Shown here: one piece after another, positions 3,387 through 28,200 of the stretch
Numbering within the stretch: the stretch's first letter is position 1
How the letters are laid out: every line of letters starts with the position of its first letter
Assembly (NCBI GenBank): GCA_026936335.1
Contig: JAPMXV010000003.1
Coordinates: 367,181-431,180, forward strand
Origin: Mantamonas sphyraenae STR306
Lineage: Eukaryota > Protista > CRuMs
Direction: 5' to 3'
Length of the DNA: 64,000 nucleotides
Translations under genes and position numbers: made by a program
Notes under the pieces: generated by a model
What the model was told of the DNA's origin: nothing
Database searches by the model: none
Seen by the model: only the letters and a program-made list of their open reading frames with translations

Positions 3387-3438
3387 CACAGCCTTTTCTT
3401 CTGCCTCACTTTGCGCACGCCCACCCTCCATTCTCCTG

Positions 3439-4499: not shown

Positions 4500-4588
4500 T
4501 TGCAGGTTCGGTTTGATTGAAACGCGCGAGGATCGCGACAGGTCCGCCAACACAAAAACGAAAAAACCGCGCAGGAACGGCCACAACC

Positions 4589-6520: not shown

Positions 6521-6663
6521 TCGCGTCCTTCTCCCTCCACGTCGTCAGTCGTCGAAAGCACCGCCTCGCAGTGGTTGGTGCATGCAGGGAGAGTTTTGTG
6601 AGAAAAGAAATGCAGAACAATCCAACCGACATCACGCACACACCCAACCCAACCCACGCACCA

Positions 6664-9600: not shown

Positions 9601-11240
9601 GCAACTCAAAGGACGGCGACGGTGCCATTCTTGTGTTTATGCAGGGTGTGGCAGAGATCAGCACCGTGTGCAGGAGACTGGAGGACCACGCACGCGGCCA
9701 GGGCAAGAGCTCCAAGTTTTGGATCCTGCCACTGCATAGTGGGCTAACCACGCAAGAGCAGCGGCAGGTGTTTCGCACACCTCCGAACGGCGTGCGCAAG
9801 GTCGTGGTCAGCACCAACATTGCAGAGACGTCCATCACCATCGACGACGTGGTCTTTGTCATCGATTCGGGCCACATGAAGGAGACGCAATTCGACGCCG
9901 CCAGCAACATGTCCCTGCTGGTGGACACGTGGGTGTCCCGTGCCGCCGCCAAGCAGCGTGCTGGGCGTGCTGGACGTGTGCGCGAGGGCGTTTGCTTCCA
10001 TCTGTTCACGTCGGTGAAGCACGAAAACATGTCTGCACACCAGCTGCCCGAAATCATGCGTGTGCCTCTCGAGCAACTGTGCCTGCAGATCATGGCCATG
10101 GGCATGGGATCGCCCAAAAAGTTCCTGGCCAAGGCACTTCAGCCGCCGGACAGCAAATCGATTGCTGCTGCCCTGCAAAGCCTGCTCAGCCTTCAAGCCA
10201 TCACGTCCGAGGGCCGCATCACCGTGCTGGGTGAGCATCTGGCCAATCTGCCTGTGGACGTGCGCTGCGGCAAGATGATTCTGTACGGCGTCATGTTTGG
10301 GTGTGTGGAGCCGGTGTGTGTCATTGCGGCGCAGCTGAGCGTCCGCTCCCCGTTTTTGTCGCCCATGGACAAGCGCAGCGAGGCAGACGAGGCCAAGCTG
10401 CAATTTGTTGTTGAGGAAGAACAGAGCGACCATTTGACGTTTTATCACGCGTACAACGACTGGCAGCAGGCGCACAACCGTTGGAAGTTCTGCCGCGACG
10501 CGTTTCTGTCGCACACCACCATGCAGAACATCCATGAGCTCAACTGGGCGTTTATGGACACGCTGGTTGAGGGAGGCTTTGTGACGCCTGCCGCTTGCCG
10601 GCTGATGAAGCGCGGCGGTGGCGGAGGAGGCGGGAGCAGCAGCAGCAGCAGCAGCGGCGGCCGTGGAGGCAACAGGCAGGCGGCAGGCGAGGTGGAGGCA
10701 CTGCGAAGCAATGCCACAGACGCCAACGTGATCAAGGCCGTGCTTGCCGCAGGGCTGTATCCAAACGTCGTCGAGGTGAAGCTGCCCGAAAAGACGTACG
10801 TGCAAACCGAGAACGGGACGATCCTGACGGATAACAAGGACGCGAAGAAGGTTCGGTACTACACTCGTGAGGACGGCCGTGTCTTTTTGCATCCGTCCAC
10901 GGTCAACTTTAGCGCCAAACACTTCAAGACGCCGTACTTGGTGTACCTGAACAAGGTGCACACATCCAAGATTTTCGTGCGAGACACGTCTGCCGTCACG
11001 CTGTTTGCACTGCTTCTGTTTGGCGGCCAATTGAAGATCGACCACGAAAAGCAAGTGATCACCCTGGACAACTGGATCCGGTGTCGGGCCAGCGCTCGTG
11101 TGGGCGTCTTGGTCAAGGAGCTCAAGACGGAACTGGACAGGCTGCTCAGCTGCAAACTCGCCGCCCCCGAGCTGGACATCGCCAACACAAAGGTCATCCA
11201 AGTGATTCGTGACGTGCTCGACGACGTGTGGGGTTCATGA
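6664..11240 (+). CDS. DEAH/RHA RNA helicase, DHX57/DHX29-like (dsRBD-like, UBA, RWD, helicase core, HA2, OB)
   Basis: Motifs GTGCGKTTQ, TQPRRLAA, DEVHER, MSAT, TNIAETSITI and QRAGRAGRV. Intron 7188-7297 joins the frames. An alternative ATG lies at 6610. Confidence 0.92.
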
Positions 11241-11415
11241 GGAGCAACATGGGGGATCAGAACCCACACGAGGCAGCGCGGCATGCTGTGGATCCTACCA
11301 GACGAGGTGATGCGACGTGTGGACGTGTGTAATGAATGCTTCGCAGTGGGCACAGCAAAGCTCTGGCTCAGCTCCAACCCATCAAACAAAACTTGATGTC
11401 GTCGTCGTCACGAAA

Positions 11416-12508
11416 ATGAACCGAGAGGAATGGACCACAGAGTTCTTGCTCAATCCCAACGATCAAACACGTGGACACTTTGTGCCGTGGCGCGAGGTGC
11501 CCGAGCAGCTGGATGTGAGTTTGCGGGAAAGAGGTGGAGCGAGTGAGTTTGCGGGAAAGAGGTGGAGCGAGTGAGTTTGCGGGCTTTTGTGAGGCCACCT
11601 TCACAGCCTGTGCAGCTGACAGAAGCGATCCACACGGACAGGCAAATCTCGATGACCTGAACAGGATGTTGGCGAGGTTGGATGATGTCAGAAGCAGCAT
11701 GACGGGTCCACTGAAGGCCATCCGAACCTTGCTGGACTGTGCTGCTGTGAGTCTCAATGCGTCACTGTGCACAATGCTGGGATCGATGTTTCTCACGAGC
11801 TTGCTCACTGATGAGACGTTCATTGGCTCCTTATATGTCATTGCCGCCAGTGCAGGACTTGCTGTCCTGGGCTTCATCGCTCTGATCGTTGTTCAGCAAA
11901 CGGGAAAGCGGAAGCTGAAGCGGATCTTGCGCGACGGCGTTGATGGCATGGAGAGTCGCGTGCTTGGGATCGACATGGTGCGCTTTGCGCTAGGTGGAGA
12001 ACCCAGCGAGGTTTCTTCTGCTCCGTATCGACGCGTGGACGGTGCGTGGGCTTTGCTGCATCGCACGAACGGCGACGAAATCTCCATGTTCCATGACTTC
12101 GAGGCCCTGCCAAGGCCAGGCTTCTCTGCAACCAGTTTGAGCGTCCTCAATGAGGCGGTGAACATTGCCAACCGAGAGTTCAAGGCATACAACCGGCAGC
12201 AGATGGTCGGAAACTTCTGCTTGCTCCCTACTGTGGGAGGAATCACCGTTCTCACCGCGACGACGGTTGGGTACATGGCCAAGGAAGTGGCTCAGGCAAT
12301 ATGCTACATTGTTTTCCCTGTTGTGGTGTGTCTGATTCTGGCAATTCTGTACGTGCAGGACCGCAAGCAAAAGGCAGCGTACAAACAGAGAATGGCCGAC
12401 AGGTTGGTCCAATGGGAGCAACGCAGCGAAGGTGTGCGCGTGTGCTACATCGAGGAAGGGTACGCACCACGATTGTTGTTTGCGGGTCGCCAAGACCAGC
12501 GCGTTTGA
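11416..12508 (+). CDS. Uncharacterised ~321-aa protein with four predicted TM segments, copy A
   Basis: Exon 11416-11514, intron 11515-11641 (GTGAGT..GCTGAC..CAG), exon 11642-12508. It has two hydrophobic hairpins, and the gene structure is conserved in copy B. Confidence 0.8.
11515..11583 (+). repeat. 28-bp tandem repeat (about 2.5 copies) at the 5' end of the intron
   Basis: GTGAGTTTGCGGGAAAGAGGTGGAGCGA twice, then GTGAGTTTGCGGG. Confidence 0.9.
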
Positions 12509-13436
12509 GCGCCACAAACGTCGGCTGCAAATGAACATCGATCCTGCCATACACCGTACACATCAATCACGTGTGGCATGGCACACGCGGTGCCAGACAC
12601 ACCTTGCCTCGTCGCATCCACTGTCATCGTCTGCGTCAAACACATCGGGGCGCCCTTTCAAGGTGCCCCTGAACACCAGTGGCCCTCTGCGCCAAAAAAC
12701 CCGTGCCTGACGTTTCTGCCACCAGAAACCCTGTCCTGCTCCAACACAACACACATCGCCCACACCAAGCCCGTTCACATGGTGCGCGATGTACTCGTCG
12801 TGCTATGGGGGTCGTGTGGACGCTTTGGAAAGATGGAAACCCTCCGCCCCTCGGGCTCCCACCCGACCTTCCAACATCATACCCACGCCACCCATCCATC
12901 CAGCCGTCTCACTTCCGTGTCCCCACACTCGTCCCCACCACATGCCGCCCCGAATCACTGCGTCTCCTCTCCCACGACGTCCCGCACTCGCCGCATCGAA
13001 CAAAATCCGTCCCACACCGGAAAACTGAAAAAAACACGAACTCTTCACCTCACTCCCGCCCACTTTTCTCTCAAAAAACCCCGCCTTCTTTCCCCACCTC
13101 CAACACACACCACCCATGTGTCCATGACCGTACACAAATCACACCCACCACCTCTGTGGTGCCCGACTCCCTCTTTCTGTGCAATCGCAAGCATAGGCGC
13201 CCACGCAGAACACCTCGGAGGGTTCTCGTCCTTGCCCAAACATCCAGCCTTGCACACAGGCTCCCTGGCCCAGGCGCCATCATGTCCCCCCCAAACACCA
13301 TCACTACCCCCCACCCATCTCGTTCACATGCCACAGACACCCCCCTGCACCTCAAACCTGTGTGCAATACTCTGCCCCAGCGCAACAACACAAAAAACTC
13401 TCACCACGTCGGCCGGAGAGAAAAAAAACACGCACT

Positions 13437-14855
13437 ATGAGCGCGCGACGTCGACGGGCAGCGCTGAGATCGCGGCTGTGGGTGATTTGCAATGACTACT
13501 GGGTGCTGTTGAGTGAAAAGGCATACCGAAGGCTGTGCCAGGACGAGTGGGAGGCAGATGGCGGAGGTGTGGACAGGAGCGAGCGGCTGCGTGTGAGCGA
13601 AGCGGAACTCCAGGCCATTGGGGGCGTCCTGGAAGCACGGCCGCTGTGCAGTGCATGCAGCATGGCCGAGATGGAACACGAGCAACCACCGATCCGTAAA
13701 AATTGCCGACGCAACAAACAGCGGTGGAAGTGTGCGGCTGGCCACTGGACGACGAGCCTGCCGGTTGAGGAATTTGCGGGGTTCGATTTGCAAAGTGGCA
13801 ACAACGCAGGGGGCCAGGGACGAGGCGGGAAGCGGCGGAGCAAAAGGCAGCTGGAGAAGGCCCAGCTGTATGGAGAAGACGACGACGGGAGCGAGTCGGG
13901 GTCGAGCGAGGAATCGTGGTTGAACAGGCTGCAGCGTGTGGATGGAGACGTTTCGGGTCACGAGGGAAAGGCTCCGGCAACAAAGAGGCAGCGAGTACAC
14001 AGCACGAGCAGCACACAGAGCTACGGAGTGACAGATGTTGGGCTGGAGAGTGGACATGTAAACATGCCATGGATGGCACAGGAAGACAGCTGGACACAGT
14101 TGCTTGGGATGGGGAGCCACAGGCTGGGAGTCGGAGGGTCCGGCCACGACGGGGCTTGGATGCTGGATGGATTGAAACCATCACCGGCCGAAAGCGAAAG
14201 CAGCGGGGCGCACAGTCCAATGTCCAACACAGGTGGGCAACAAGGCGCGCAAATGGGCAAGCAGGGAGGCATGGGCGCCCAGGTGGAAGGAATGGGCTCT
14301 GGAAAGTCGGGCAACGATTCCATGGAGCTGCAACTGCTGTATCAACAACAGCAGATGTTGACGGCACAGCAGCAGGCGTGGCTGATGGCCATGCAGCAGG
14401 CACAGCTGCAAGCTCAGGCACAGGCGCATGCGCAATTGATCGTACAGCAGCAACAAGAACAAGCTCAGCAACGACAGGGCGGCCAACAACCCGCCGTGGC
14501 ATCCAAGCTGGCTAGCCTGGCGCAGACGCTTCCCACCATCCATGCAGGAAGCACAATGATGTTGCAGGGAGCAACCGGGGCAGCAGCAAACAACAGGCTG
14601 GCGACGCTGGCGGGTCTGGGAGTGAACGGCTTGCTGGGCAACTTGCCGCAGGTGGCTGCGGCAGCAAGCCAAGAGGCACAGGGAGCGGGGCACGGGAACA
14701 AGGGGCAGGACGAATGCACACGGAGCAGCATGAGTGGACCGGGCAAACCGGAGCCGAATGAGGAAGAGGTTGTGGAGGACAAGGACATGTTGAAGGCGGC
14801 GCATCTGCTATTGGAGAGCTTTTGTGGCACCGCCAAGACGAATGAAAGCAAGTGA
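13437..14855 (+). CDS. Uncharacterised 472-aa protein with a Cys/His cluster, basic NLS-like stretches and a Q-rich region, copy A
   Basis: Contains CSAC-x15-C-x8-C-x3-H, RGGKRRSKR and a long Q/A-rich tract. The ORF is preserved in both repeat arms. Confidence 0.75.
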   Translation: MSARRRRAALRSRLWVICNDYWVLLSEKAYRRLCQDEWEADGGGVDRSERLRVSEAELQAIGGVLEARPLCSACSMAEMEHEQPPIRKNCRRNKQRWKCAAGHWTTSLPVEEFAGFDLQSGNNAGGQGRGGKRRSKRQLEKAQLYGEDDDGSESGSSEESWLNRLQRVDGDVSGHEGKAPATKRQRVHSTSSTQSYGVTDVGLESGHVNMPWMAQEDSWTQLLGMGSHRLGVGGSGHDGAWMLDGLKPSPAESESSGAHSPMSNTGGQQGAQMGKQGGMGAQVEGMGSGKSGNDSMELQLLYQQQQMLTAQQQAWLMAMQQAQLQAQAQAHAQLIVQQQQEQAQQRQGGQQPAVASKLASLAQTLPTIHAGSTMMLQGATGAAANNRLATLAGLGVNGLLGNLPQVAAAASQEAQGAGHGNKGQDECTRSSMSGPGKPEPNEEEVVEDKDMLKAAHLLLESFCGTAKTNESK

Positions 14856-14974
14856 TGCGTGTGGATGGGACAGCTTTGAACATAGGTTGCATTGATTTCC
14901 CTGGACGGACAGTGGAGGTTGCCATTGACGCCCAAAGTTTGTCGTCAAAGGACTTTTCCCCAGTGTTGCGGCGG

Positions 14975-16166
14975 TCACACAGCCTGTGACTCTACTTCAA
15001 CAACGTCACTGTCTGCGGCGCTAACGTTCATCCTCACCGCCGTGCCATCGTTGCTGACAAGGCCGCCTTTGCGTACCTTTGGAGGGCCGGAACTTGTGGT
15101 GTCTGTGTCATCCTGCTCATCCTCTTCCTGCTTTGCCTCCTCTGCCTTGCGCCTTTCCCGCTCCTCTCTGCGAGCCGCACGTTCTGCCCGTTTCCTGGCT
15201 TTCTCATCGGCCCGGTGTGCTTCTCGCAGCTCAATCTCCCTCTCCGATCGCGCTTTCAGGGCCTTCCAGTCTGCTTCGACCTGACCCATGAGTGTGGCCA
15301 TGGCCTGGCGAATGCGCGGATCGATTTCTGCCTCCTCCTCAGTCTTGGCAATGCACGCCTCGATCTGGATGGAGCTCATGGACGTCAGTTCGTCCAGGCC
15401 CAGCTCTTCAGACAGCTCCACCTCGCTCACTGCCCCCGGTAGGTCTTGTTTGTTTGCGAATCTGTGCACACTCCATGTCAGCATATGTTGGCAGGCGCCC
15501 AGCACAAAGACGAGTCCGTCGTCGCCGCAGGGACTCACATCAACAACGGCTTGCCCTGCACCGTCTCTGTGTGGCATGTCTTGTGTAGTTCTGCTTTGGC
15601 TTCGGCAAAGCGCTCGCGGTCGGCAGCATCGACGACAAAAATCACGCCTTGCACCTGTGGCAAACGGCAGGAGGGGAAGGTCTGCGTCAGCAACGCGCGC
15701 GGATTAACGGTTTCGCCGGCGAGGTCGCCCTCGCTGATCGTCACAGAAGGAAACGGCACACACAAGAACACGTCCCCAACTCTCTACGCCGCGTTTGCCT
15801 TCAACCTACGTCTGCGTAGTACTCGTTCCAGTAGCCGCGGATGCGAGCGCCGCCGCCGAGGTCGTAGATCTCAATCTCAAAGTCCTGGTCAAACTCCATG
15901 CGCTCGTTGGAAAATCCCCACGTGGGCGCTGTTTCGGTGACATGTTCCCCCTTGATGGAGCCCAGCAGAGTGGTCTTTCCAGCTGCATCCAGCCCCACCA
16001 GCATCACCGTTGCCTTCTTCTCTCCCTTTTCCCTCATATACTCATACAGATTGCGCATGAGCTGGAACTGTGAACAGGGGCGTGTGGAGTGGGTGTGAGT
16101 GACGCAGACAGGCAGCCACAGAGGCGTTGGGACACATGAAAGGTCATGTGGAGCAAAACGTACCAT
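14975..16166 (-). CDS. ARL13B: Ciliary ARF-like GTPase ARL13B
   Basis: Exons 16166-16164 (ATG only), 16067-15810, 15654-15539 and 15461-14975. The protein starts MFQLM and has GLDAAGKT, the ARL13-type G3 DLGGGARIR (no catalytic Gln), ANKQD and a C-terminal coiled coil. Confidence 0.9.
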
Positions 16167-16218
16167 GGTGGAAGACTTTTTGCTTTGCCCCGGCCCCGCC
16201 AGCACACACACACACGAC

Positions 16219-17283
16219 ATGTCCTTCTTCCGTGGCAAAAAGAAAAGCAGCAGCAGCAAGAGCAGCTCCGGGTCCACCTCCACATCCAACAGCGGCAGCA
16301 ACTCGGGCTCGTCTGGCTCTTCAGCCGCCAAGAAAGTGTTTGCCAAGTACTCCGGTGAGTTTGTGTGCAGCCCCCACTCTGTGTCGCTGCTCGTCCACTG
16401 TCGCGCTTTCCCTCCCTGTTCCCTTGTGGCCGTATCGTGGCTGGGAGAACCGCAGTTGCAGCGTGGGGTAGGCCCTGGACCGGGGGCCGCACCCGCGGTC
16501 CCGATCAGCCGCAGCCGGAGTTCCCGTCGATGCTAACACACTCCGCTCGCCTCCATGCACCTATACCACGCCATTCCGTGCAGACGAAGAGACCGGAAAC
16601 ATCGAGGTTCAGGGGTACATGGAGCTGCTGGGCGACCTGAACATCGAAGACCCGAACGGCGTGAGTTTTGCCCGGCTGTCGGGAAGTGGGGCGGTGGAAT
16701 CCCCTCCCGGCGCGTTGGCGCGTCCGACAGGAGTGTGTGAGCCTGCGAGACAATGGTTGGTCACTGACGCGGCATTGTATTGCGTTTCACCTGCATCCAT
16801 GGCATCGAGCAGATCGAGCCGTTTGTGTTTTCCTTTATGTGCGACGCCAAGAACATGGGCCAGATCACGGAAGAGGAGTTTACCACGGGCATGACCTCCG
16901 TGGGAGCCACATCGATCACACAGCTGAAGACCAAGCTGGCCGTGCAGGTGGACACAGTGCTCAACGACCACACCACATTCAGGAAGTTCTGGAAGTACGT
17001 GTTTGTGTTTCTGTGCGACCGGGAACGACAACGCAGCGTGGAGATGGAAAAGTGCCAGATTGTGCTCAATCTGGTCAAGGACCAACTCCCCCTCACCGAG
17101 TCCTTCCTCCAGTTTGCCGCCGAGAAACAGGTAAAGGGCCTGACCAAGGACCAGTGGAGCTCCTTTGTCGACTTTACCGAGGCCGACATGGCCGACTATG
17201 ACGAAAGCGGCGCATGGCCGACTCTGTTTGACTCGTACGTGCGATGGGTCAAGGGTGAGGACAAGGACGAAACCAAGAAGTGA
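16219..17283 (+). CDS. DCN1-like cullin neddylation protein (PONY domain)
   Basis: Exons 16219-16354, 16584-16660 and 16813-17283; motifs MGQITEEEF, KGLTKDQW and YDESGAWPTLFDSYV. Confidence 0.9.
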
Positions 17284-17341
17284 TGTGGGCCTCGACAATC
17301 GCAACAACAAAACAAACACTCCCCCTTCCCCTCACGACACC

Positions 17342-19009
17342 ATGTCCAGTGTGTGCATTGGAGTCCACTTTCCCGACCCAGACAAGGCGTTCTCCAGCCC
17401 ACACGCATGCACAAACCACACGAAAGGCCACACCACCCTCAGTGCGTCGGGTGTGCTCGTTTCCCAGCGCCAAGTGCTCACCGCCGGCGCCGCGTTTGTG
17501 CCGCTTGTCAACAACCATGGGCAATTTCGCATTGATGGAACACAGGTTTTGGTTTACATGCAGTCGGCACGCAGTGGGGTGTGCGGCTGGGTGCCTGCAC
17601 AGTTGCGTGGCCTGCACTGCGTCGACTCCTTCCGCAAAGCGCTGTGTCGCACGCTGCGAGGCTCCTTTGAGTGGTCCCCAATGGCAGAGACAATGCCTAC
17701 GCAAACCACAATGGGTGGCAGCAGCAATGACAATGACCACAGCGAAGTGGAGGCGCTGTCGGACGTGGAGAGCACGGCAAAGCTGCTGGCCACCGTGGCT
17801 GTGTTTGACCTCGTCGGCACACAATGGTTTGTGCGCGACCGCCACGGCCAATGGAGTGGTCATGTGTTGCTGGACGAGGACCTGAACATGGCCACATGGG
17901 ATACAGAAAGCATGGGGCCTGTGGAACTTCTGGACACGCCCATTCTGTGTCGTTGCAGCCCATTTGGCGTAAGCACCATCGACTGCTTGTTTGATCTGCG
18001 CAAAAGCGGTGTGGTGGCCAACGTGGTTGATGACGCCCTTCTCATCACAGATGTCAACGCGGTGCCAGGGTTTGAAGGGTCGCCAGTGTTTGACGCAGTG
18101 TCAGGCAAACTGTTGGGCTTGCACACAAACGGCATCACACGAGCCGATGGCTACCAGCCTGCGTTTAGTGTGGCCATGGGTATCCAGGCACTGATGGGGG
18201 CTGTGTGTGCGAATGGTACCGAGGCACACGTGCGCATACAACGCACGGCTTCCTGGAGCCATCCGTGCGCTCGTGGATGCGTGATGGTGGTCGAAAACAC
18301 AACGTGGGCATCGGGTTGTGTGTTGCCCAACGGTCTCGTCCTCACAAACGCCCATGTGGTGCGCAAGACCCGAAATCCAACGACCATCTTTGTCCAGGAC
18401 AACACCTACCAAGCTGTGCCCGCACGCTTGCTGTGGAGATCCGATTGTGCGCTGGACTTGGCCGTGTTGGCCATCGAGTGGGAGTACGAAGAGGTGCACG
18501 ACATGTTCAGCAGCGTGCAGGTCCCCTCGAAGGAACCAAGCTACGATGTCGGCATGGCGCTGCTCAACATCGGATACCCTTCGTTTGAACCGCACGCCAA
18601 ACTGCACCCCAGCATCACACGTGGACAGCTCTCGCGCGTAGTCCACGACGACAACGGCCGTGCCGTGCAACTGATCACCGAAGCAAACACGCAACACGGC
18701 AACAGCGGCGGCGTAGTCGTTGATGCACACACAGGCGACATGATTGGCATCACCTATGCTGTGTTGTCCTATGTGCGCAACAACACAAAGGCATCTGTGT
18801 CTGTGCCGCACATATCACTTGCGCTCCCCGTGACTGTGCTTCGGCCCGTGCTCGACCTCAGCTACAGTGACGCACGGGACAACGACACCGTGGTCGCCAT
18901 CATGGAATCCATTGTACATACCTATGCCACCGCGCGCACAAACATGCTGTGGTCGACCCTCGGCGTCACAACTCCTTCGTCGTTCCATGCCGCACGAGCC
19001 AGACTATGA
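17342..19009 (+). CDS. TYSND1: Peroxisomal trypsin-like leader-peptide processing protease (TYSND1/DEG15-like)
   Basis: Two trypsin-like lobes (PGFEGSPV; LTNAHVV..DLAVL..GNSGG) and a C-terminal PTS1 tripeptide -ARL. Confidence 0.82.
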   Translation: MSSVCIGVHFPDPDKAFSSPHACTNHTKGHTTLSASGVLVSQRQVLTAGAAFVPLVNNHGQFRIDGTQVLVYMQSARSGVCGWVPAQLRGLHCVDSFRKALCRTLRGSFEWSPMAETMPTQTTMGGSSNDNDHSEVEALSDVESTAKLLATVAVFDLVGTQWFVRDRHGQWSGHVLLDEDLNMATWDTESMGPVELLDTPILCRCSPFGVSTIDCLFDLRKSGVVANVVDDALLITDVNAVPGFEGSPVFDAVSGKLLGLHTNGITRADGYQPAFSVAMGIQALMGAVCANGTEAHVRIQRTASWSHPCARGCVMVVENTTWASGCVLPNGLVLTNAHVVRKTRNPTTIFVQDNTYQAVPARLLWRSDCALDLAVLAIEWEYEEVHDMFSSVQVPSKEPSYDVGMALLNIGYPSFEPHAKLHPSITRGQLSRVVHDDNGRAVQLITEANTQHGNSGGVVVDAHTGDMIGITYAVLSYVRNNTKASVSVPHISLALPVTVLRPVLDLSYSDARDNDTVVAIMESIVHTYATARTNMLWSTLGVTTPSSFHAARARL

Positions 19010-19068
19010 CGACAAAATGAACTCAGTGCATGCTTTGCCAGGCGAGTTTATTCCAACACGTTTCACTC

Positions 19069-21162
19069 TTAGCGACTGGGGCCGACGTGGTAGTTCTGCG
19101 CGAGCGGTTCGCGGATGGTGCTCACCTTTCGACGCTTCTGGTCCGACCCGGCCAGAGCCGAGTAGTCCTGCGACTCTTGGGACTCCTGAAGCAGCGAGCC
19201 GAGGGCAGCGCGTGTAGTGGTGCTGATCTCGGAGATGTCGGCCAGTTTGCGCTTGCCCAGCGGAGAGCGACGCATCTGCAACACACTGCTGCCGATGACC
19301 TGCGACTCGGGTGTGTTTGGCGTTTCAGCCATGGCCTCTGGTGTGCCTGTGTGTCCACCATCCTCCTCCTGCTCGTCTTCACTGACATCCTCGGTCATGC
19401 TGGCACCATCGTCGTCGTCCTCCTCCTGTGTGTTCAGCGCGTTGTCTCCGTCACTGGACATGCTCGTGGCTTGCAGCTGCACGCTGAGACCTTCCATCTG
19501 CTGCATGTGGTCGATGGCTGCCAGATGTTCTGCGCTAATATTGTCCACCACCGAGGTGCTCTTCAGACGTCGATCGAGCTCATCCGCAAGTCGCTTGCGC
19601 ACTCCGCGCAGCTGAGTCATGCCGCGCAAATACATCGTTGAGGCTCCGTTCTTGCGGCGCACCAACCTACACGCCACAAGTTCTCCCATCGCCATGTCGT
19701 ACACATCCCTGGTCACCTCGTCGGACAGTGCAGCACTGACACGCGCATAGCTGATGGATCCCTTGTCCCAATCCATCACCGCGCGCTGTACACGCATCAC
19801 CGCCTCTTCCAGCATCGAGACACACTGAACGACCTGCGCATAGGCCTCTTCATCCACAGCATCCATCTCCTCGGTCACTGTCTCAGCAGGCTTGCTGGCC
19901 TCCACGGACATCTGGCTCGACTCGGTTGTGGCCTGGGACTCGACGATCACCTGTTCCGGGGTGCCCTTCTCACGCTGGTCGTCGTCCAGCTCGTCTGCAA
20001 ATACATACTGGATGCTCTTGCGTGTGCCTTTGTCCGTCTGCGAAGACGGAGTCGACCCACTGCGCTTGATGCGCAAGATTCCGTCGTCAACCATCGTGTG
20101 GAAGATCGCTTCGATCACCTCATTGCCCATCTCGGGAAAGCGCCGCTGGACATGCGCCATGTCGGGAGAACCGTGTTCACGGATCAGAGAGATGACCGTG
20201 CGATACAGATCCTCCTGGCCCTGGCCCTGGTCACGGTCATCCTCGCCTGTCGCCGCTCGTTGCCGCTCCTCTTCGTCGTCGTCCTCGTCCAGGGGTGGCT
20301 CCTCCATCTGCGCATCCATGACTGTCTGGATGCGCAGCTTCATGCTGCAGTACGGCGTCTTGATTTCGCCGATGCGCATTTTGAACGGATCGCGTGCAAA
20401 CACCAGCTTGTCATCGGAACTCGCAGCCCGGAAGAATGCCGGCTCGTAGTCGGCCGGGGTGCGCTCGTCGTAGTACAGCAGCTTCATAGTCAGGAAGCGC
20501 TGGTCGGGAATGGGCACCAGCGTGGAAACCAGCGAGTCCAACACACGGATCATCGACACTGCCGCCTTGCGGATGTTTGCCTTGCTGAAGTGGCTGATGT
20601 CCGGCAGGCTGCCCGACCGACTGGTTTGACCCTCGGTGTTGGTGTGGTCCATGTCCATGTTGATGTGGCCGTCGCGGGTGTACGAGATGTTGAAGTGGTA
20701 GCACTCCACCATGGTGTCCGGGTTGTCTGCATCCAGGTAGATGCCAAAGACAATTCGGCGCAACTGTGCATGTGCAGAGAGGGTGTCAGACGGAGCCATC
20801 GACACATGTGCATGGCAAGAGTGGGCATGTCGATCCTTCCCCTACGTAATGCTTGGCCAGGGCGTCGAAAACACCCTTTTCCAGCCAGTTGACCAAGATC
20901 TTGGCTTCCTTGTCACCCTGCCGCGGCTTGAGTGTTTTGATAGGTTGCCCCGCAATCTGGTGGTCTTGGAAGCATTGTGAAGGAAACAGCTGCCGCAGGT
21001 AGCAGATGCATGAGATGCTCGTGCGCAGCAGGTTCCTGAGATTTGCTCGAAATAGGAGTTGTGTGTCAGGAACGCACTTCCGTAATCAGGATCGCCCGTC
21101 AACACCTACCGCACAAGAATCGCCGACTGCTCACGTGTAGGAGCAGCTTGGACGCGCGTCAT
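19069..21162 (-). CDS. HOP1: Meiotic HORMA-domain axis protein HOP1/HORMAD/ASY1
   Basis: Exons 21162-21110, 21035-20846 and 20763-19069 give RNLLRTSISCICYLRQLFP..WLEKGVFDALAKHYLR..ECYHF..MKLLYYDERTPADYEPAFF. There are SQ sites and a C-terminal closure-like motif RRKVSTIREP. Confidence 0.93.
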
Positions 21163-21333
21163 TTGAGCCGTGGAAGACTGTGGTACTGTGTGTGTCAACA
21201 TGCGGCCAGGTTTCCCCCTTCGGTTTCCTCGCTCGCACTGACCATTTCTTTTGGACTTCTTCAAACAAGAAACGGATCTGGTTTGCTTGCCCTAGACTGC
21301 GCACGCAAATCCCGTTCTCCTCAAAACCATTCC

Positions 21334-21570
21334 ATGAGCACCACGCAGCAATCACCGACTCCGAGCCAGATTCAAACCTCTCTCGACCATGCTGTGCAGG
21401 AGATGGAGGCCCACGTGCACAAGTATCTTGCCGGAAAACGAGATGAGCTCAAGCAGCTGTGCGCTCGCAAAAAGAATGAGCTCGAAATTGCAGAGAAGGA
21501 GCTGACCGCGCTACGCGCCTCCAACCATCGCAAGCGCAACGCCATCTCTGCCCTTGTCGGAACTATGTGA
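21334..21570 (+). CDS. Small 78-aa coiled-coil protein divergent from HOP1
   Basis: ATG after an A/C-rich leader; heptad-like, K/E-rich sequence; fills the gap between HOP1 and repeat arm B. Confidence 0.6.
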   Translation: MSTTQQSPTPSQIQTSLDHAVQEMEAHVHKYLAGKRDELKQLCARKKNELEIAEKELTALRASNHRKRNAISALVGTM

Positions 21571-21623
21571 GGCCCATGGTCATCCAATGCAACCCATGTT
21601 CAAAGCTGTCCCATGCACACGCA

Positions 21624-23042
21624 TCACTTGCTTTCATTCGTCTTGGCGGTGCCACAAAAGCTCTCCAATAGCAGATGCGCCGCCTTCAACATGTCCTTGT
21701 CCTCCACAACCTCTTCCTCATTCGGCTCCGGTTTGCCCGGTCCACTCATGCTGCTCCGTGTGCATTCGTCCTGCCCCTTGTTCCCGTGCCCCGCTCCCTG
21801 TGCCTCTTGGCTTGCTGCCGCAGCCACCTGCGGCAAGTTGCCCAGCAAGCCGTTCACTCCCAGACCCGCCAGCGTCGCCAGCCTGTTGTTTGCTGCTGCC
21901 CCGGTTGCTCCCTGCAACATCACTGTGCTTCCTGCATGGATGGTGGGAAGCGTCTGCGCCAGGCTAGCCAGCTTGGATGCCACGGCGGGTTGTTGGCCGC
22001 CCTGTCGTTGCTGAGCTTGTTCTTGTTGCTGCTGTACGATCAATTGCGCATGCGCCTGTGCCTGAGCTTGCAGCTGTGCCTGCTGCATGGCCATCAGCCA
22101 CGCCTGCTGCTGTGCCGCCAACATCTGCTGTTGTTGATACAGCAGTTGCAGCTCCATGGAATCGTTGCCCGACTTTCCAGAGCCCATTCCTTCCACCTGG
22201 GCGCCCATGCCTCCCTGCTTGCCCATTTGCGCGCCTTGTTGCCCACCTGTGTTGGACATTGGACTGTGCGCCCCGCTGCTTTCGCTTTCGGCCGGTGATG
22301 GTTTCAATCCATCCAGCATCCAAGCCCCGTCGTGGCCGGACCCTCCGACTCCCAGCCTGTGGCTCCCCATCCCAAGCAACTGTGTCCAGCTGTCTTCCTG
22401 TGCCATCCATGGCATGTTTACATGTCCACTCTCCAGCCCAACATCTGTCACTCCGTAGCTCTGTGTGCTGCTCGTGCTGTGTACTCGCTGCCTCTTTGTT
22501 GCCGGAGCCTTTCCCTCGCGACCCGAAACGTCTCCGTCCACACGCTGCAGCCTGTTCAACCACGATTCCTCGCTCGACCCCGACTCGCTCTCGTCGTCGT
22601 CTTCTCCATACAGCTGTGCTTTCTCCAGCTGCCTTTTGCTCCGCCGCTTCCCGCCTCGTCCCTGGCCCCCTGCGTTGTTGCCACTTTGCAAATCGAACCC
22701 CGCAAATTCCTCAACCGGCAGGCTCGTCGTCCAGTGGCCAGCCGCACACTTCCACCGCTGTTTGTTGCGTCGGCAATTTTTACGGATCGGTGGTTGCTCG
22801 TGTTCCATCTCGGCCATGCTGCATGCACTGCACAGCGGCCGTGCTTCCAGGACGCCCCCAATGGCCTGGAGTTCCGCTTCGCTCACACGCAGCCGCTCGC
22901 TCCTGTCCACACCTCCGCCATCTGCCTCCCACTCGTCCTGGCACAGCCTTCGGTATGCCTTTTCACTCAACAGCACCCAGTAGTCATTGCAAATCACCCA
23001 CAGCCGCGATCTCAGCGCTGCCCGTCGACGTCGCGCGCTCAT
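21624..23042 (-). CDS. Zn-finger-like/Q-rich protein, copy B
   Basis: Differs from copy A at 4 residues (G>E, H>R, T>A, M>V). Confidence 0.75.
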   Translation of the reverse strand: MSARRRRAALRSRLWVICNDYWVLLSEKAYRRLCQDEWEADGGGVDRSERLRVSEAELQAIGGVLEARPLCSACSMAEMEHEQPPIRKNCRRNKQRWKCAAGHWTTSLPVEEFAGFDLQSGNNAGGQGRGGKRRSKRQLEKAQLYGEDDDESESGSSEESWLNRLQRVDGDVSGREGKAPATKRQRVHSTSSTQSYGVTDVGLESGHVNMPWMAQEDSWTQLLGMGSHRLGVGGSGHDGAWMLDGLKPSPAESESSGAHSPMSNTGGQQGAQMGKQGGMGAQVEGMGSGKSGNDSMELQLLYQQQQMLAAQQQAWLMAMQQAQLQAQAQAHAQLIVQQQQEQAQQRQGGQQPAVASKLASLAQTLPTIHAGSTVMLQGATGAAANNRLATLAGLGVNGLLGNLPQVAAAASQEAQGAGHGNKGQDECTRSSMSGPGKPEPNEEEVVEDKDMLKAAHLLLESFCGTAKTNESK

Positions 23043-23970
23043 AGTGCGTGTTTTTTTTCTCTCCGGCCGACGTGGTGAGAGTTTTTTGTGTTGTTGCGCT
23101 GGGGCAGAGTATTGCACACAGGTTTGAGGTGCAGGGGGGTGTCTGTGGCATGTGAACGAGATGGGTGGGGGGTAGTGATGGTGTTTGGGGGGGACATGAT
23201 GGCGCCTGGGCCAGGGAGCCTGTGTGCAAGGCTGGATGTTTGGGCAAGGACGAGAACCCTCCGAGGTGTTCTGCGTGGGCGCCTATGCTTGCGATTGCAC
23301 AGAAAGAGGGAGTCGGGCACCACAGAGGTGGTGGGAGTGATTGGTGTACGGTCATGGACACATGGGTGGTGTGTGTTGGAGGTGGGGAAAGAAGGCGGGG
23401 TTTTTTGAGAGAAAAGTGGGCGGGAGTGAGGTGAAGAGTTCGTGTTTTTTTCAGTTTTCCGGTGTGGGACGGATTTTGTTCGATGCGGCGAGTGCGGGAC
23501 GTCGTGGGAGAGGAGACGCAGTGATTCGGGGCGGCATGTGGTGGGGACGAGTGTGGGGACATGGAAGTGAGACGGATGGATGGATGGGTGGCGTGGGTAT
23601 GATGTTGGAAGGTCGGGTGGGAGCCCGAGGGGCGGAGGGTTTCCATCTTTCCAAATCGTCCACACGACCCAAAAAGCACGACGAGTACATCGCGCACCAT
23701 GTGAACGGGCTTGGTGTGGGCGATGTGTGTTGTGTTGGAGCAGGACAGGGTTTCTGGTGGCAGAAACGTCAGGCACGGGTTTTTTGGCGCAGAGGGCCAC
23801 TGGTGTTCAGGGGCACCTTGAAAGGGCGCCCCGATGTGTTTGACGCAGACGATGACAGTGGATGCGACGAGGCAAGGTGTGTCTGGCACCGCGTGTGCCA
23901 TGCCACACGTGATTGATGTGTACGGTGTATGGCAGGATCGATGTTCATTTGCAGCCGACGTTTGTGGCGC

Positions 23971-25071
23971 TCAAACGCGCTGGTCTTGGCGACCTGCAAA
24001 CAACAATCGTGGTGCGTACCCTTCCTCGATGTAGCACACGCGCACACCTTCGCTGCGTTGCTCCCATTGGACCAACCTGTCGGCCATTCTCTGTTTGTAC
24101 GCTGCCTTTTGCTTGCGGTCCTGCACGTACAGGATTGCCAGAATCAGACACACCACAATTGGGAGAACGATGTAGCATATTGCCTGAGCCACGTCCTTGG
24201 GTAGGTCCCTAATCGTCGTCGCGGTGAGAACGGCGATTCCTCCCACAGCAAGGAACAACCAGAAGTACCGGACCATCTGACGCCGGTTGTATGCCTTGAA
24301 CTCTCGGTTGGCAATGTTCACCGCCTCATTGAGGACGCTCAAACTGGTTGCAGAGAAGCCTGGCCTTGGCAGGGCCTCGAAGTCATGGAACATGGAGATT
24401 TCGTCGCTGTTCGTGCGATGCAGCAAAGCCCACGCACCGTCCACGCGTCGATACGGAGCAGAAGAAACCTCGCTGGGTTCTCCACCTAGCGCAAAGCGCA
24501 CCATGTCGATCCCAAGCACGCGACTCTCCATGCCATCAACGCCGTCGCGCAAGATCCGCTTCAGCTTCCGCTTTCCCGTTTGCTGAACAACGATCAGAGC
24601 GATGAAGCCCAGGACAGCAAGTCCTGCACTGGCGGCAATGACATATAAGGAGCCAATGAATGTATCATCCCTGGGGTTGCTCGTGAGAAAGATCGATCCC
24701 AGCATGGTGCTCACAGACGCATTGAGACTCACAGCAGCACAGTGCAGCAAGGTTCGGATGGCCTTCAGTGGACCCGTCATGCTGCTTCTGACATCATCCA
24801 TCCTCGCCAACATCCTGTTCAGGTCATGGAGATTTGCCTGTCCGTGTGGATCCCTTCTGTCAGCTGCACAGGCTGTGAAGGTGGCCTCACAAAATTACCC
24901 GCAAACTCGTTGGATCCGTCCCTGTCCCGCAAACTCACTCGCTCCACCTCTTTCCCGCAAACTCACATCCAGCTGCTCGGGCACCTCGCGCCACGGCACA
25001 AAGTGTCCACGTGTTTGATCGTTGGGATTGAGCAAGAACTCTGTGGTCCATTCCTCTCGTTTGTTTGTCAT
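23971..25071 (-). CDS. Uncharacterised 4-TM protein, copy B
   Basis: Exons 25071-24967 and 24837-23971; same intron position as copy A. Confidence 0.8.
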
Positions 25072-25201
25072 TTTCGTGATGACGACATGCCGTTGGGCTG
25101 AGTGGGGCCCTTGAAGGGAAATGGCTTTGTGGGGTGGGTGTGCATTGAATAGTTGCATGATGCATGTATGCATAAAGGACAGTAAACAGGGTGGGATTCA
25201 T

Positions 25202-28200
25202 TCACTGTGTTTCGGTGTCGCCCTCGATGTTTTCCTCGTCGTGGAACAACACTGGGGCACCCTCGATCATCTCCTCCACACAGTGGATGAGGAGATCGTG
25301 TGCGGACATGGGCACACGCCACACGGTGTTTGTGCCATTCCCGCGCCAGCTGGTGCTTCGAGGTGGAAGGCCTGAGGGGCCGTCGTCCTCGATTGCATTC
25401 TGGGCCATGGAGGAGGAGCCAGCTGCTCCCTGGCTGCTTTTGCGTCGGCCGGCGAGTGCAGACGAGGTTGCTCGCGCGTGGGAACCAGAATCAAAGGCGG
25501 TGCCGTCATCGTCGCCTGTCGAGTCGTTGTCGTCGTCCAGCTCGTCAAAGTCGATAGCCTGTGCCTCGGTGGCAAACAGAGTTGGTGCAAACAGGGTGGC
25601 CAGAGTGGGTCCGGTCAGCTGGTTGCGGCTGGTATTGAAGGCCAAGCGGTTGAGGAGGAAGAGGACATGGTAGAGAACGTTGCGTTGCGGATCGGCCAGC
25701 ATGTCCACGTACTGGGCCAGAAACTCGGCTGTAGCCACCTCGTGCATGGCATCAAGCTTCGAGCTGCGGTTCTTGCGCATGTGTGCGCTGACAGCCTGCT
25801 CCACGTCGCTCAGCGCCACCTTGGCAACGGCAGGCGTGAACACAGGTTCGGGCAACATGTCCAGGTAGAGCTTCATGAGCGAGGCCACCTCATGAGGCCC
25901 CACGTGTGGTTCTTCGGTGAGCACAACCAGCCGCTCGCAGTCGTACAGTTCGCGCAGGTGTTCCACCATCACCTCGTCGGTGGCGCTCTTGCGGAACAGG
26001 TCTGGCGTGTCCATGCCGTGCTTCTCAAGGAATTCCAGGCAATCTTGCAGGGGGACGGGAAGCACGGTTGCTCGCTTTCGTTGCAGAGCCTTGTTCAGCT
26101 CGAGCCCAAACACGGCTGGGAGCAGGATGACGGCTGTGTCGCGCACACGACCGGGCAACAGTACCATCAGCGCACCCAACCAGTGTTCCAGCTCATCCTG
26201 CGAGCTGTTCTTGTGCAACTTGAAGCGCACGAGCTTGGGGCCCTTCTTCTTGCGCTTTGATTCTTCGCGACGCTCCAGGGAAAAGGTAAACACGTCGTCC
26301 TTGACAGTGATGCTGAGGAAGCGCTTCATGGACGTCGACTCCTTGATGTCGTCGTCCTTTCCAAAGAACAGTCGTGTGTTGTCCCTGCTCACGCGAAGGA
26401 CAACGTGGCGCCACGCCAGCCCCGACTTTTTCTGCACGTCGATACCCACGTGCAAGGCCTTTTGCTGGTCGTCCGTGAGCACCTCTTCCGACTGGTCCAG
26501 ACTCTTGTTCACGCGTGGCTTGTAGTACTTGCGTGTCCTGCCTGCGCGCTGTGTGCGCTTGGTTCGTGGAGCACGTGTTTTCGCGCGTCCGGCGCGCGAG
26601 TGCCGCGAGTCGACGGTCGATACCGTGAATGCCGTGCTTACGCTACTCACACTTTCAAAGCTGTTGGCTCGCTCGCGTCCACCGAGCTCGTCGTCATCGC
26701 CTTTGGCCTCCGAGGCGCCGTGGGAGGCCTTGAGCGCAAGCGCTGGACTAGACTGGATCTCGGGCACCTGAAAGTTGCGTCGCTTGAGCTGCTCGTGGAT
26801 GCGACCCACAAAGTATGGGTACTCGCGTTGGACGTAGGGAAGGACGCTGCGCCACGCTTCGTCCCACAAGTCGTCTCCGGCAGCCTCGTAGTCGCCGAGG
26901 ATCTGCAGGGTGATCGAGTCGTCCAAGGTGAGGGATGGGTCGATGACAAAGCGGGTGGTGATCTCGTCGCTCATGCTGTAGCGCTCGCGGCGCAGCTGGA
27001 TCTGCTTGTACGACAGAATTGCCTCACGGAAACGTACGAGCACGCCGATCTTGCCTTTGACCTCGTCGGCGTAGGTGCAAAACACCTTGAGCCACGATTG
27101 GTGGATCTGGTCGCCCGTTTGCATGCTGTCGAGGATGAGCGAGACGTCGTTGGGTGGCGCAGCCAGGTGTTCAAGCAAAAAGGTCACCGCCTGGATGTCC
27201 TCAAACATGTGGTTGTACGACGAGTACCTGGGAAAGTGCACTCTGTGTTCGTCCTCCACGGGAAGCGTCGAGCGCTGGCGCGACCGCTTCCGCCTCCTGG
27301 GCCCCGGTTTGCGTGCGGGTTTGTCCGCAGCTTGCGCGGCGGCCATCTCGACATCTGTTTGCTCAGCAGGGGCAGCAGCGTTTTGCTGCGTCGGCTTGTA
27401 TGCCGGTGTTGGGCTGTCTGCAGAAGGGCCTGCGTCTGTGCTGTCTGGGTTGTCCTTGGTCACAGCTGCCTTTTGCTTGCCGTAGGATGGTCGGCCCGCC
27501 TCAATGTCGTCAAAGTTGACGCTGTGGGTGTTTGTCATGCCAATGAGAAGAGCCTGTTCGTCGTCATCGTCGTCAAAGAAGCCGTCGTCGTCGTCTTCGT
27601 CGTCGGAATCATCCTCAAAGTCCGAGTCGGACCAAACCGAGTCGTCGTCGCTGTCGGGGTATTCTGTTTCGTCGTAGATGAGGCGGTCGTTGCTTGCGGT
27701 GCCACGCATCATGACGCGCGAGCGCCAAAGGTTGTCGACGAGCTGTGGCAGCTTGCAGGGGCTGCAGATGACGACCAAGGCAAGGACCCACGGCCAGACG
27801 CTCATGACGAGCTTGCCTAGCACGGCGTCGTCGATGAGAATCTTCCAAAAGTTGTAGTAGACCAGGTGCTCGTGGGAGGGCGAGTTGCGTGCGACGACAA
27901 AGAGAAAGTTGAGGCAAATCGGATGGAGGGTGCTGAGAAGGTAGTAGCAGATTTTGAGGAGGGAGGCGTTGTCCATGGAGGAGTTGAACCGCAATGGGTA
28001 GACGTTGACGGCCTGGAGGGTGCCGAGTTCAAAGAGGGCGATAAGGACGCAGACGGAAAAGTAGATGAGGAAGCCGAGGGCAATGAGGACGGCGAGATAT
28101 GGCACGTCGGCAGCGAGGTCGACCAGGTTGGCAATAACAAGGGCATCATCATGGGCGGGCGAGTGGCGTGCCCACAGCTGAAAGGCAATGGCGCACTCTG

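What the first reader, a model, noticed from the sequence alone, without database searches (positions are those of the whole stretch)
11401..25086. HOP1-containing 6.7-kb cassette between 3.5-kb gene-bearing inverted repeats: candidate flip-flop or mating-type-like locus
Seen: arms 11401-14894 and 21585-25086 are inverted copies, collinear over more than 3.2 kb. They enclose ARL13B, DCN1, TYSND1, HOP1 and a small coiled-coil ORF. Each arm encodes a 4-TM protein and a Zn-finger/Q-rich protein, both pointing inward. No transposase, recombinase or target-site duplication is visible. Known: kb-scale inverted repeats support inversion by homologous recombination, which is how methylotrophic yeasts (Ogataea, Komagataella) switch mating type, and HOP1 is a meiosis gene. 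Inference: the interval may be invertible and homogenised by gene conversion. A putative surface protein in two forms, a putative regulator, a ciliary GTPase and a meiotic gene together suggest an undescribed sex or recognition locus. A crossover in the near-identical middle of the TM genes would also swap their variable halves.
Basis: partly seen in the sequence, partly recalled or inferred. Interest (0 to 1): 0.85.

Follow-up and report, generated by a model that had tools for sequence, protein, structure and literature searches.

The report
Gene-bearing inverted duplication, not a sex locus
A real pair of 3.5-kb inverted gene copies encloses five ordinary genes near a chromosome end of a small protist genome; it is one of several such duplications kept alike by gene conversion, and nothing marks it as a mating-type or switching locus.

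Summary
Arms 11396-14894 and 21585-25088 are inverted copies, 98% identical, with sharp edges and a 6,690-bp unique spacer. Each arm is present only twice in the 25-Mb genome. Contigs of two DNA runs give the arms about twice the depth of the flanks, with each arm-specific variant at single depth. This rules out a haplotype mis-join. Each arm carries an expressed, spliced 4-TM gene and an expressed Q-rich gene; neither has a detectable relative. The spacer holds ARL13B, a DCN1-like gene, a trypsin-like protease, HOP1 and a 78-codon ORF.

The structure is not special to this place. The 294 kb of this contig that I could read hold four inverted duplications (arms 1.7-3.75 kb, spacers 1.9-13 kb, 97.2-97.8% identity) and no dispersed direct one. 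Other arms carry ribosomal protein L2 and ARF genes. All four are mosaics of identical tracts and 10-23% diverged patches. In the TM gene, synonymous divergence is 0.14-0.20 inside the patches and 0.005 outside, which fits gene conversion.

Orientation could not be tested, because only contigs were served. The spacer has no paired regulators at its ends and no adjoining telomere (39 kb away). First-stage notes of this scan list many similar repeats elsewhere in this genome. Verdict: an ordinary inverted segmental duplication; the sex-locus reading is not supported.

The parts
11396..14894 (+). Inverted-repeat arm A (two-gene block, genes read towards the spacer)
   Evidence: 98% identical to arm B, sharp edges; collapsed arm contigs have about 2x the depth of the flanks.
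21585..25088 (-). Inverted-repeat arm B
   Evidence: Its outer junction to the RhoGAP flank appears as a loose end at 11422 in both DNA runs.
11416..12508 (+). 4-TM orphan gene, copy A: exon 1 11416-11514, intron 11515-11641 (GT..AG), exon 2 11642-12508. A 7-codon uORF at 11396-11419 ends on the start codon.
   Evidence: A cDNA contig in run X3 skips 11515-11641 and matches copy A with no difference. Hydropathy gives two hairpins. No homologue found.
23971..25071 (-). 4-TM orphan gene, copy B: exon 1 25071-24967 (two extra codons), intron 24966-24838, exon 2 24837-23971
   Evidence: 27 of 288 exon-2 residues differ from copy A. B letters at 11626/11651/11678 are seen in cDNA run X4.
11735..11818 (+). 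Diverged patch 1 of the TM gene (first helix and loop of hairpin 1)
   Evidence: dS 0.20, dN 0.19; residues 42-58 of exon 2.
12198..12346 (+). Diverged patch 2 of the TM gene (first helix and loop of hairpin 2)
   Evidence: dS 0.14, dN 0.17, against dS 0.005 in the 380 bp between the patches.
13437..14855 (+). Q-rich orphan gene, copy A (472 codons; Cys/His cluster near residue 90)
   Evidence: No Pfam hit. No hit for residues 1-163 among 1.84 billion representatives. cDNA contigs in X3 and X4.
21624..23042 (-). Q-rich orphan gene, copy B (4 residues differ from A)
   Evidence: The X3 cDNA contig (depth 338) carries the B letter at all 7 differing sites.
14895..21584 (.). Unique 6,690-bp spacer with five genes
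   Evidence: One 6,812-nt contig in each DNA run covers it, with 61 nt of arm at each end in opposite strands.
14975..16346 (-). ARL13B-like GTPase (introns 15462-15538 and 15653-15807)
   Evidence: best solved relatives 4m9q, 5di3_B. Spliced cDNA contig.
16780..17283 (+). DCN1-like gene (Cullin_binding domain exon)
   Evidence: E 4e-20
17165..19009 (+).
19069..20805 (-). HOP1 meiotic HORMAD, main exon (the HORMA match starts at profile position 67, so an upstream exon is expected)
   Evidence: PMC10907721 lists the Mantamonas HORMAD with two wHTH domains.
21334..21570 (+). 78-codon coiled-coil ORF ending 14 nt before arm B
7347..11240 (+). Left flank: DHX57 orthologue (UBA, RWD, DEAH helicase)
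25202..28828 (-). Right flank: LMBR1-RhoGAP fusion gene
63802..64000 (+). TTAGGG telomere repeats at the end of the contig, 38.9 kb from arm B

Best explanation
This is a genuine, homozygous, two-copy inverted segmental duplication of a two-gene block (orphan 4-TM gene plus orphan Q-rich gene). It brackets a 6.7-kb single-copy segment of five unrelated genes, 39 kb from a telomere. The genome's statistics match Mantamonas sphyraenae. The likely history, which is inferred, is as follows. One rearrangement copied the block in inverted orientation to the other side of the spacer. The best fit is an inversion with one staggered breakpoint, with all four junctions in the tiny intergenic gaps of a compact genome. 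Since then the arms have exchanged sequence by intrachromosomal gene conversion. That leaves long identical tracts next to old, unconverted patches. The patches lie in the first helix and loop of each hairpin of the TM protein and evolve at dN/dS of about 1. The locus is one instance of a common architecture in this genome, not a dedicated switch. The arms can in principle recombine and flip the spacer. Such a flip would leave every gene intact and is not known to change anything.
For: Shown: the repeat and its sharp edges. Shown: two copies only in the genome. Shown: about 2x k-mer depth of collapsed arm contigs and 1x depth of arm-specific contigs in two DNA runs, with both outer junctions and the whole spacer seen in an assembler-independent graph. 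Shown: both arm genes are expressed, and the TM gene is spliced. Shown: four inverted and no dispersed direct duplications in 294 kb, each two-copy, and other arms carry RPL2-like and ARF genes. Shown: the same mosaic of identical tracts and 10-23% patches in all four. Shown: clustering beyond chance. Shown: synonymous divergence about 30-fold higher in the patches than between them, intergenic divergence 0.9%, Q gene dS 0.009. Inferred from literature: inverted duplications of unique genes at inversion breakpoints are the signature of staggered breaks (PMC1885836).
Against: The ancestral gene order is unknown, so the inversion itself is not shown. The Drosophila duplications of this type reach only about 1.9 kb, and these arms are 3.5 kb. 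All four repeats sit at 97.2-97.8% identity, which neither random ages nor a simple conversion model predicts. The DNA runs are probably the libraries the assembly was built from, so they are independent of the assembler but not of the sample. dN/dS of about 1 in the patches also fits diversifying selection. The patches could instead be imports from a diverged allele.
Confidence: 0.7

Rival explanations
1. Passive flip-flop. The spacer inverts at measurable frequency by crossing-over between the arms, as in plastid inverted repeats or human X-linked inverted repeats. Both isomers would then coexist in the culture or species, without any regulatory role.
For: Arms of 3.5 kb with identical tracts of 715, 400, 320 and 307 bp. 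The gene-conversion signature shows that the arms do pair and recombine. An inversion would break no gene, because all junctions are intergenic.
Against: There is no observation of the second orientation. A contig graph is symmetric for this structure and cannot tell. The PacBio-based assembly reports one orientation. The one full-length TM cDNA contig links patch-1 A with patch-2 A.
Confidence: 0.2
2. Programmed switch or mating-type-like locus. Inversion would move alternative determinants between an active and a silent position, or would swap the variable halves of two recognition proteins.
For: Inverted repeats flank a cassette in a chromosome-end region. The two TM proteins differ mainly in two loops predicted to lie on the same side of the membrane. 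A meiotic gene lies in the spacer. In cDNA run X3 the TM contig is type A and the Q-gene contig is type B.
Against: There is no pair of alternative regulators at the spacer ends, and no homeodomain, HMG or other DNA-binding domain anywhere. The Q-rich copies are 99% identical. The telomere is 38.9 kb away. The same architecture recurs around RPL2-like and ARF genes. Flanks and spacer are homozygous. The arm genes have no relatives to support any role. The X3 pattern can come from bubble popping and from the 95% likeness cut-off, which a full-length copy-B contig would barely pass.
Confidence: 0.04
3. Assembly artefact: two haplotypes of one locus, or a palindromic PacBio chimera, joined in inverted orientation.
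For: The organism is reported as diploid and the assembly comes from PacBio RSII reads with FALCON. The 2% divergence resembles allelic divergence.
Against: Arm contigs have about 2x the depth of the flanks, and each variant has 1x rather than 0.5x. Arm B has its own unique flank, seen as a 255-nt loose end in both DNA runs. The spacer contig carries A letters at one end and B letters at the other. Both TM copies are seen in cDNA.
Confidence: 0.03
4. A young duplication whose diverged patches are driven by diversifying selection on the TM protein (two functional forms), rather than being relics spared by gene conversion.
For: 27 amino-acid differences are concentrated in helix 1 and the loop of both hairpins. 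dN is 0.17-0.19 in the patches.
Against: Synonymous sites in the patches are equally diverged (dS 0.14-0.20 against 0.005 outside), which selection on the protein does not explain. Equivalent patches occur in the intron and in the three other inverted repeats.
Confidence: 0.1

Closest known systems
Inversion-associated inverted duplications (staggered-break model; Ranz et al. 2007, PMC1885836)
   Same: Inverted copies of unique, protein-coding, non-repetitive sequence sit at the two ends of a segment. Only one breakpoint region is duplicated, as in 12 of the 18 Drosophila cases. The edges are sharp and no transposon is involved.
   Different: The arms are 3.5 kb, against a maximum of about 1.9 kb (median 321 bp) in Drosophila. 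The arms are 98% identical and both copies are intact and expressed, whereas the Drosophila copies average 88% and are often degenerate. The enclosed segment is only 6.7 kb. The inversion itself is not demonstrated, for lack of an outgroup.
Flip/flop mating-type switching of methylotrophic yeasts (Ogataea polymorpha, Komagataella phaffii; PMC6692504)
   Same: Kilobase-scale inverted repeats flank a cassette on a chromosome arm that ends in a telomere. Recombination between such repeats would invert the cassette.
   Different: There are no MATa/MATalpha-like alternative regulator sets at the cassette ends. No silencing region (centromere or telomere) adjoins one repeat. No second orientation has been observed. 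The architecture is repeated elsewhere in the genome around housekeeping genes.
Palindromes and inverted repeats kept alike by arm-to-arm gene conversion (sex-chromosome palindromes, plastid inverted repeats; from general knowledge)
   Same: Gene-bearing arms with a unique spacer. The arms are much more alike than their oldest parts imply. The mosaic of identical tracts is the expected footprint of conversion.
   Different: The arms here are far smaller, autosomal-type and scattered at several loci. Identity is 98% with 15-20% diverged patches, not the 99.9% or more of those systems.

Membership tests
Flip/flop mating-type switching locus | Inverted repeats flanking the invertible region | tested here: met
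Flip/flop mating-type switching locus | Two alternative sets of cell-type regulators at opposite ends of the invertible region | tested here: not met
   The spacer genes are ARL13B, DCN1-like, protease, HOP1 and a 78-codon ORF. No DNA-binding domain was found. The arm copies of the Q-rich gene differ at 4 residues.
Flip/flop mating-type switching locus | One end adjoins a repressing region (telomere or centromere) | tested here: inconclusive
   The telomere is 38.9 kb from arm B. The centromere position is unknown.
Flip/flop mating-type switching locus | Both orientations found among cells or strains | not testable with these tools
   Only Logan contigs were served, and no record spans an arm.
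Inversion-associated inverted duplication (staggered breaks) | Inverted copies of ancestrally unique, non-repetitive sequence at the ends of one segment | tested here: met
   Two copies only in the genome. No transposase and no target-site duplication.
Inversion-associated inverted duplication (staggered breaks) | Discrete breakpoints with no homology beyond them | tested here: met
Inversion-associated inverted duplication (staggered breaks) | The enclosed segment is inverted relative to the ancestral order | not testable with these tools
   No relative is available: none in the genome collection, none in metagenome contigs.
Inverted repeat under arm-to-arm gene conversion | Mosaic of identical tracts and much older patches, with heterogeneous synonymous divergence along one gene | tested here: met
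Inverted repeat under arm-to-arm gene conversion | Arms within the species more alike than orthologous arms between species | not testable with these tools
   No second mantamonad genome is at hand.
Transposon with long terminal inverted repeats | Multiple copies, target-site duplication, transposase or recombinase | tested here: not met
Assembly artefact (haplotype mis-join) | Single-copy total depth over the arms, with variants at half depth | tested here: not met
   arms about 2x, variants about 1x

The most novel reading that the evidence does not exclude
Inverted duplication coupled to small inversions, followed by arm-to-arm gene conversion, is the dominant mode of recent gene duplication in this deep-branching protist. 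It would leave dozens to hundreds of gene-bearing quasi-palindromes. These cassettes, this one included, would exist in both orientations in the cell population.
Probability: 0.2. Interest if true: 0.55.

Novelty: new member of a known kind. Interest (0 to 1): 0.3.

Why it matters
The locus by itself matters little. It is a well-preserved inverted segmental duplication with a clear gene-conversion footprint and two expressed orphan genes. The recurrence deserves a follow-up. I found four inverted and no dispersed direct duplications in 294 kb, all at about 97.5% identity with the same mosaic pattern, and first-stage notes list many more across the genome. The genome paper does not mention this feature. 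A genome-wide count could show an unusual bias in how a CRuMs-lineage eukaryote duplicates genes. It would also give a set of natural substrates for measuring mitotic inversion and conversion rates. For annotation, the near-identical arms inflate apparent heterozygosity and paralogue counts if reads are cross-mapped.

Tried and rejected
- **Homology of the arm proteins.** All searches were empty: Pfam; a word-indexed search of 5.8 billion proteins with TM exon 2; a full HMMER scan of 1.84 billion representatives with residues 1-163 of the Q-rich protein; the ESM Atlas for both (best score 0.89, below the usable level); metagenome contigs.
- **Structure.** AlphaFold2 without an alignment gave mean pLDDT 46 (TM exon 2) and 53 (Q-rich N-terminus). 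That is too low for a fold search, so none was run.
- **Joined TM protein.** The spliced TM protein was never joined. Exon 2 was searched by reference on its own, and the joined step was left out.
- **Synteny.** The protease gene found no relative in metagenome contigs. The exact-protein look-up of the Q-rich protein found no record.
- **Third source for the diverged patches.** None was found in the genome.
- **Non-coding RNA.** Rfam found nothing in 10500-26000.
- **Orientation and phasing.** Only contigs were served, so this could not be addressed.
- **Rest of the contig.** The census therefore covers 294 kb only.
- **Transposon, haplotype mis-join and PacBio chimera readings.** These were considered and rejected; see the membership tests.
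Full report
**The observation**

The inverted repeat is real. The repeat finder reports arms 11585-14894 and 21585-24894 (3,310 nt, 98% complementary, 6,690 nt apart) and an outer extension 11412-11583 / 24898-25069. A full alignment shows 69 substitutions and 8 gap columns in 3,502 columns. Homology starts at 11396 / 25088 and stops abruptly at 14894 / 21585. The 500 bp beyond each edge align no better than shuffled sequence. The arm DNA and both arm-encoded proteins occur exactly twice in the 25.06-Mb genome.

**Where the window lies**

- The window is the last 64 kb of contig C3 (431,180 bp) and ends in TTAGGG repeats. Arm B therefore lies 38.9 kb from a telomere.
- Genome size (25.06 Mb), contig number (78), GC content (59.19%) and TTAGGG contig ends match the FALCON assembly of Mantamonas sphyraenae described in PMC10492846. 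That assembly used PacBio RSII reads plus Illumina paired-end and mate-pair libraries, and the organism was inferred to be diploid.
- The species identification is my inference from these figures, not a sequence match.
- The DHX57 orthologue in the left flank has no relative above 46% identity. That fits an isolated lineage.

**Is the duplication an artefact?**

The one read-laying run covered 6,000 letters, 10400-16399. It used four runs of one study, all served as Logan contigs.

- In the two DNA runs, the flank contig (2,992 nt) and the spacer contig (6,812 nt) have depth 57.5/59 (X1) and 40/42.8 (X2).
- The collapsed arm contigs have depth 102 (X1) and 72-77 (X2).
- Contigs specific to arm A in the variable stretches have depth 55-64 and 38-48.
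- At 11626, 11651 and 11678 the B letters account for half of the summed depth.
- The 6,812-nt contig is the whole spacer plus 61 nt of arm at each end on opposite strands. It carries the A letter at one end and the B letter (14864) at the other.
- Arm B's own outer junction appears as a loose end at 11422.

The duplication is therefore present at two copies per haploid genome, on both homologues, in an assembler-independent graph. This refutes the haplotype mis-join. These runs are probably the libraries the assembly was made from, so the evidence is independent of the assembler but not of the sample. Flanks and spacer show no heterozygosity.

**Genes in the arms**

Runs X3 and X4 are in fact cDNA. 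Their contigs skip GT..AG introns at 11515-11641 (TM gene) and at 15462-15538 and 15653-15807 (ARL13B, minus strand).

- *The 4-TM gene.*
  - Copy A has exon 1 at 11416-11514 and exon 2 at 11642-12508, giving 321 codons.
  - Copy B has two extra codons in exon 1.
  - Hydropathy gives two helical hairpins around a roughly 100-residue middle part.
- *The Q-rich gene.* It occupies 13437-14855 (472 codons). It has a Cys/His cluster near residue 90 and a long Q/A-rich tail.
- *Homology.* Neither protein has a Pfam domain or a detectable relative. Single-sequence structure models are of low confidence. 'Surface protein' and 'Zn-finger regulator' therefore remain guesses.
The joined protein was not built.

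**Genes in the spacer and flanks**

  - ARL13B-like gene;
  - DCN1-like gene;
  - Trypsin_2 protease;
  - HOP1;
  - a 78-codon ORF.
- The Mantamonas meiotic HORMAD with two winged-helix domains is already catalogued in PMC10907721.
- All four junctions fall in intergenic gaps of 50-160 bp. This is what selection would leave in a compact genome.

**Pattern of divergence**

| Region | Divergence between arms |
|---|---|
| TM-Q intergenic stretch | 0.9% |
| Q-rich gene | dS 0.009, dN 0.004 |
| TM gene, 380 bp between the patches | dS 0.005 |
| TM patch 1 (11735-11818) | dS 0.20, dN 0.19 |
| TM patch 2 (12198-12346) | dS 0.14, dN 0.17 |

- Clustering is far beyond chance: 31 neighbour gaps of 10 nt or less, against 9.2 expected and a maximum of 19 in 2,000 randomisations.
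- Synonymous sites in the patches are as diverged as replacement sites. Selection on the protein alone cannot explain that. The segments have different histories.
- The simplest account is an old duplication, most of which has recently been overwritten by arm-to-arm gene conversion.
- No third copy exists that could have donated the patches.
- The patches map to the first helix and the loop of each hairpin.

**The locus is not unique**

A self-comparison of that stretch finds four inverted duplications and no dispersed direct one. The only direct repeats are tandem arrays at 80-90% identity.

| Pair (window coordinates) | Arm length | Spacer | Identity |
|---|---|---|---|
| -221957 to -210383 | 3.75 kb | 4.1 kb | 97.6% |
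| -20696 to -15331 | 1.7 kb | 1.9 kb | 97.2% |
| -15464 to 1286 | 1.8 kb | 13.1 kb | 97.3% |
| 11401 to 25086 (this locus) | 3.5 kb | 6.7 kb | 97.8% |

- Each arm is two-copy in the genome.
- The other arms carry a ribosomal protein L2-type gene, an ARF GTPase gene and orphan ORFs. One spacer holds a leishmanolysin-TIG gene and another a B-box-MATH gene.
- All four pairs show the same mosaic of long identical tracts and 10-23% diverged patches. In three of the four, identity is highest towards the spacer.
- Unchecked first-stage notes of this scan list many more such structures on other contigs, around RPLP2, RPL23A+PFDN6, HSF/PRP4 and LRR-ankyrin genes.
- The genome paper does not mention them.

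**Mechanism**

- *Shown:* a two-copy inverted duplication with sharp edges and a conversion footprint.
- *Inferred:* the origin. Inverted copies of unique genes at the two ends of a segment, with only one breakpoint region duplicated, are what the staggered-break model of inversion predicts (PMC1885836).
- *Differences from that model:* the arms are about twice as long as the longest Drosophila case. Both copies remain intact and expressed.
- *Limit:* without an outgroup the inversion cannot be polarised.
- *Inversion today:* crossing-over between the arms would invert the spacer without damaging any gene. The one full-length cDNA contig links A with A. No recombinant form and no second orientation was seen or could be seen.

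**Comparison with flip/flop mating-type loci**

PMC6692504 describes these loci. Only the inverted repeat itself is shared with them. The present locus lacks several of their defining features:

- It has no alternative regulator sets at the cassette ends.
- No silencing region adjoins one repeat.
- The region is homozygous.
- The same architecture recurs around housekeeping genes.

I put the programmed-switch reading at about 4%, passive flipping at a detectable level at about 20%, and an assembly artefact at about 3%.

**An unexplained detail**

In cDNA run X3 the TM contig is pure type A. The abundant Q-gene contig (depth 338) carries the B letter at all seven differing sites. X4 shows both TM types and a mixed Q contig. 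This could mean unequal expression of the copies or a recombinant arm. It could equally come from bubble popping in contig building and from the 95% likeness cut-off, which a full-length copy-B TM contig (about 95% alike) would barely pass. Raw reads are needed.

**Verdict**

Invertibility is plausible but untested. The sex or recognition locus is not supported. The thing is a new member of a known kind. The recurrence of the architecture across the genome is the more interesting lead.

Noticed in passing
window -221957..-210383, -20696..-15331 and -15464..1286 (G000:C3:145223-156797, 346478-351849, 351717-368474; loci L007-L011): Three further gene-bearing inverted duplications lie on the same contig (arms 1.7-3.75 kb, spacers 1.9-13.1 kb). 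All are at 97.2-97.8% identity with the same mosaic of identical tracts and diverged patches. No dispersed direct duplication occurs in the 294 kb. The narrow identity range is unexplained.
   Followed up: partly
L008:4526-4675 (G000:C3:351706-351855): About 150 nt belong to both neighbouring inverted repeats, so they exist in three copies (query positions 1573-1722 match both partners). This suggests reuse of a breakpoint or nested events.
   Followed up: no
window 13559-14854 and 11398-12559, cDNA run X3: The abundant Q-gene cDNA contig carries the arm-B letter at all 7 differing sites, while the TM cDNA contig is pure arm A. This means unequal expression of the copies, a recombinant arm, or a contig-building effect.
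   Followed up: no
window 11396-11419 and 25088-25068 (minus strand): A short upstream ORF (7 codons in arm A, 6 in arm B) starts exactly at the outer edge of the repeat. Its stop codon overlaps the TM gene's start codon (ATGA) in both arms.
   Followed up: no
window 12509-13436: The 928-bp stretch between the TM and Q-rich genes is covered by cDNA contigs in run X4 at about the same depth as the genes. This suggests a long 5' leader of the Q-rich gene. No Rfam family matches it.
   Followed up: partly
window 11515-11583 versus 24966-24895: The TM-gene intron begins with a tandemly repeated unit of about 28 nt that contains the 5' splice-site motif. The copies of the unit differ between the arms. 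The cDNA uses the first site in arm A.
   Followed up: partly
window 60049-62194: A direct tandem duplication of a 1.1-kb unit (about 89% identity) lies 2 kb from the telomere repeats.
   Followed up: no
window 28000-64000: Strong, sustained positive GC skew (up to 0.55) runs over the last 36 kb towards the telomere.
   Followed up: no
window 25202-28828: A single ORF combines an LMBR1-like membrane domain with a RhoGAP domain.
   Followed up: no
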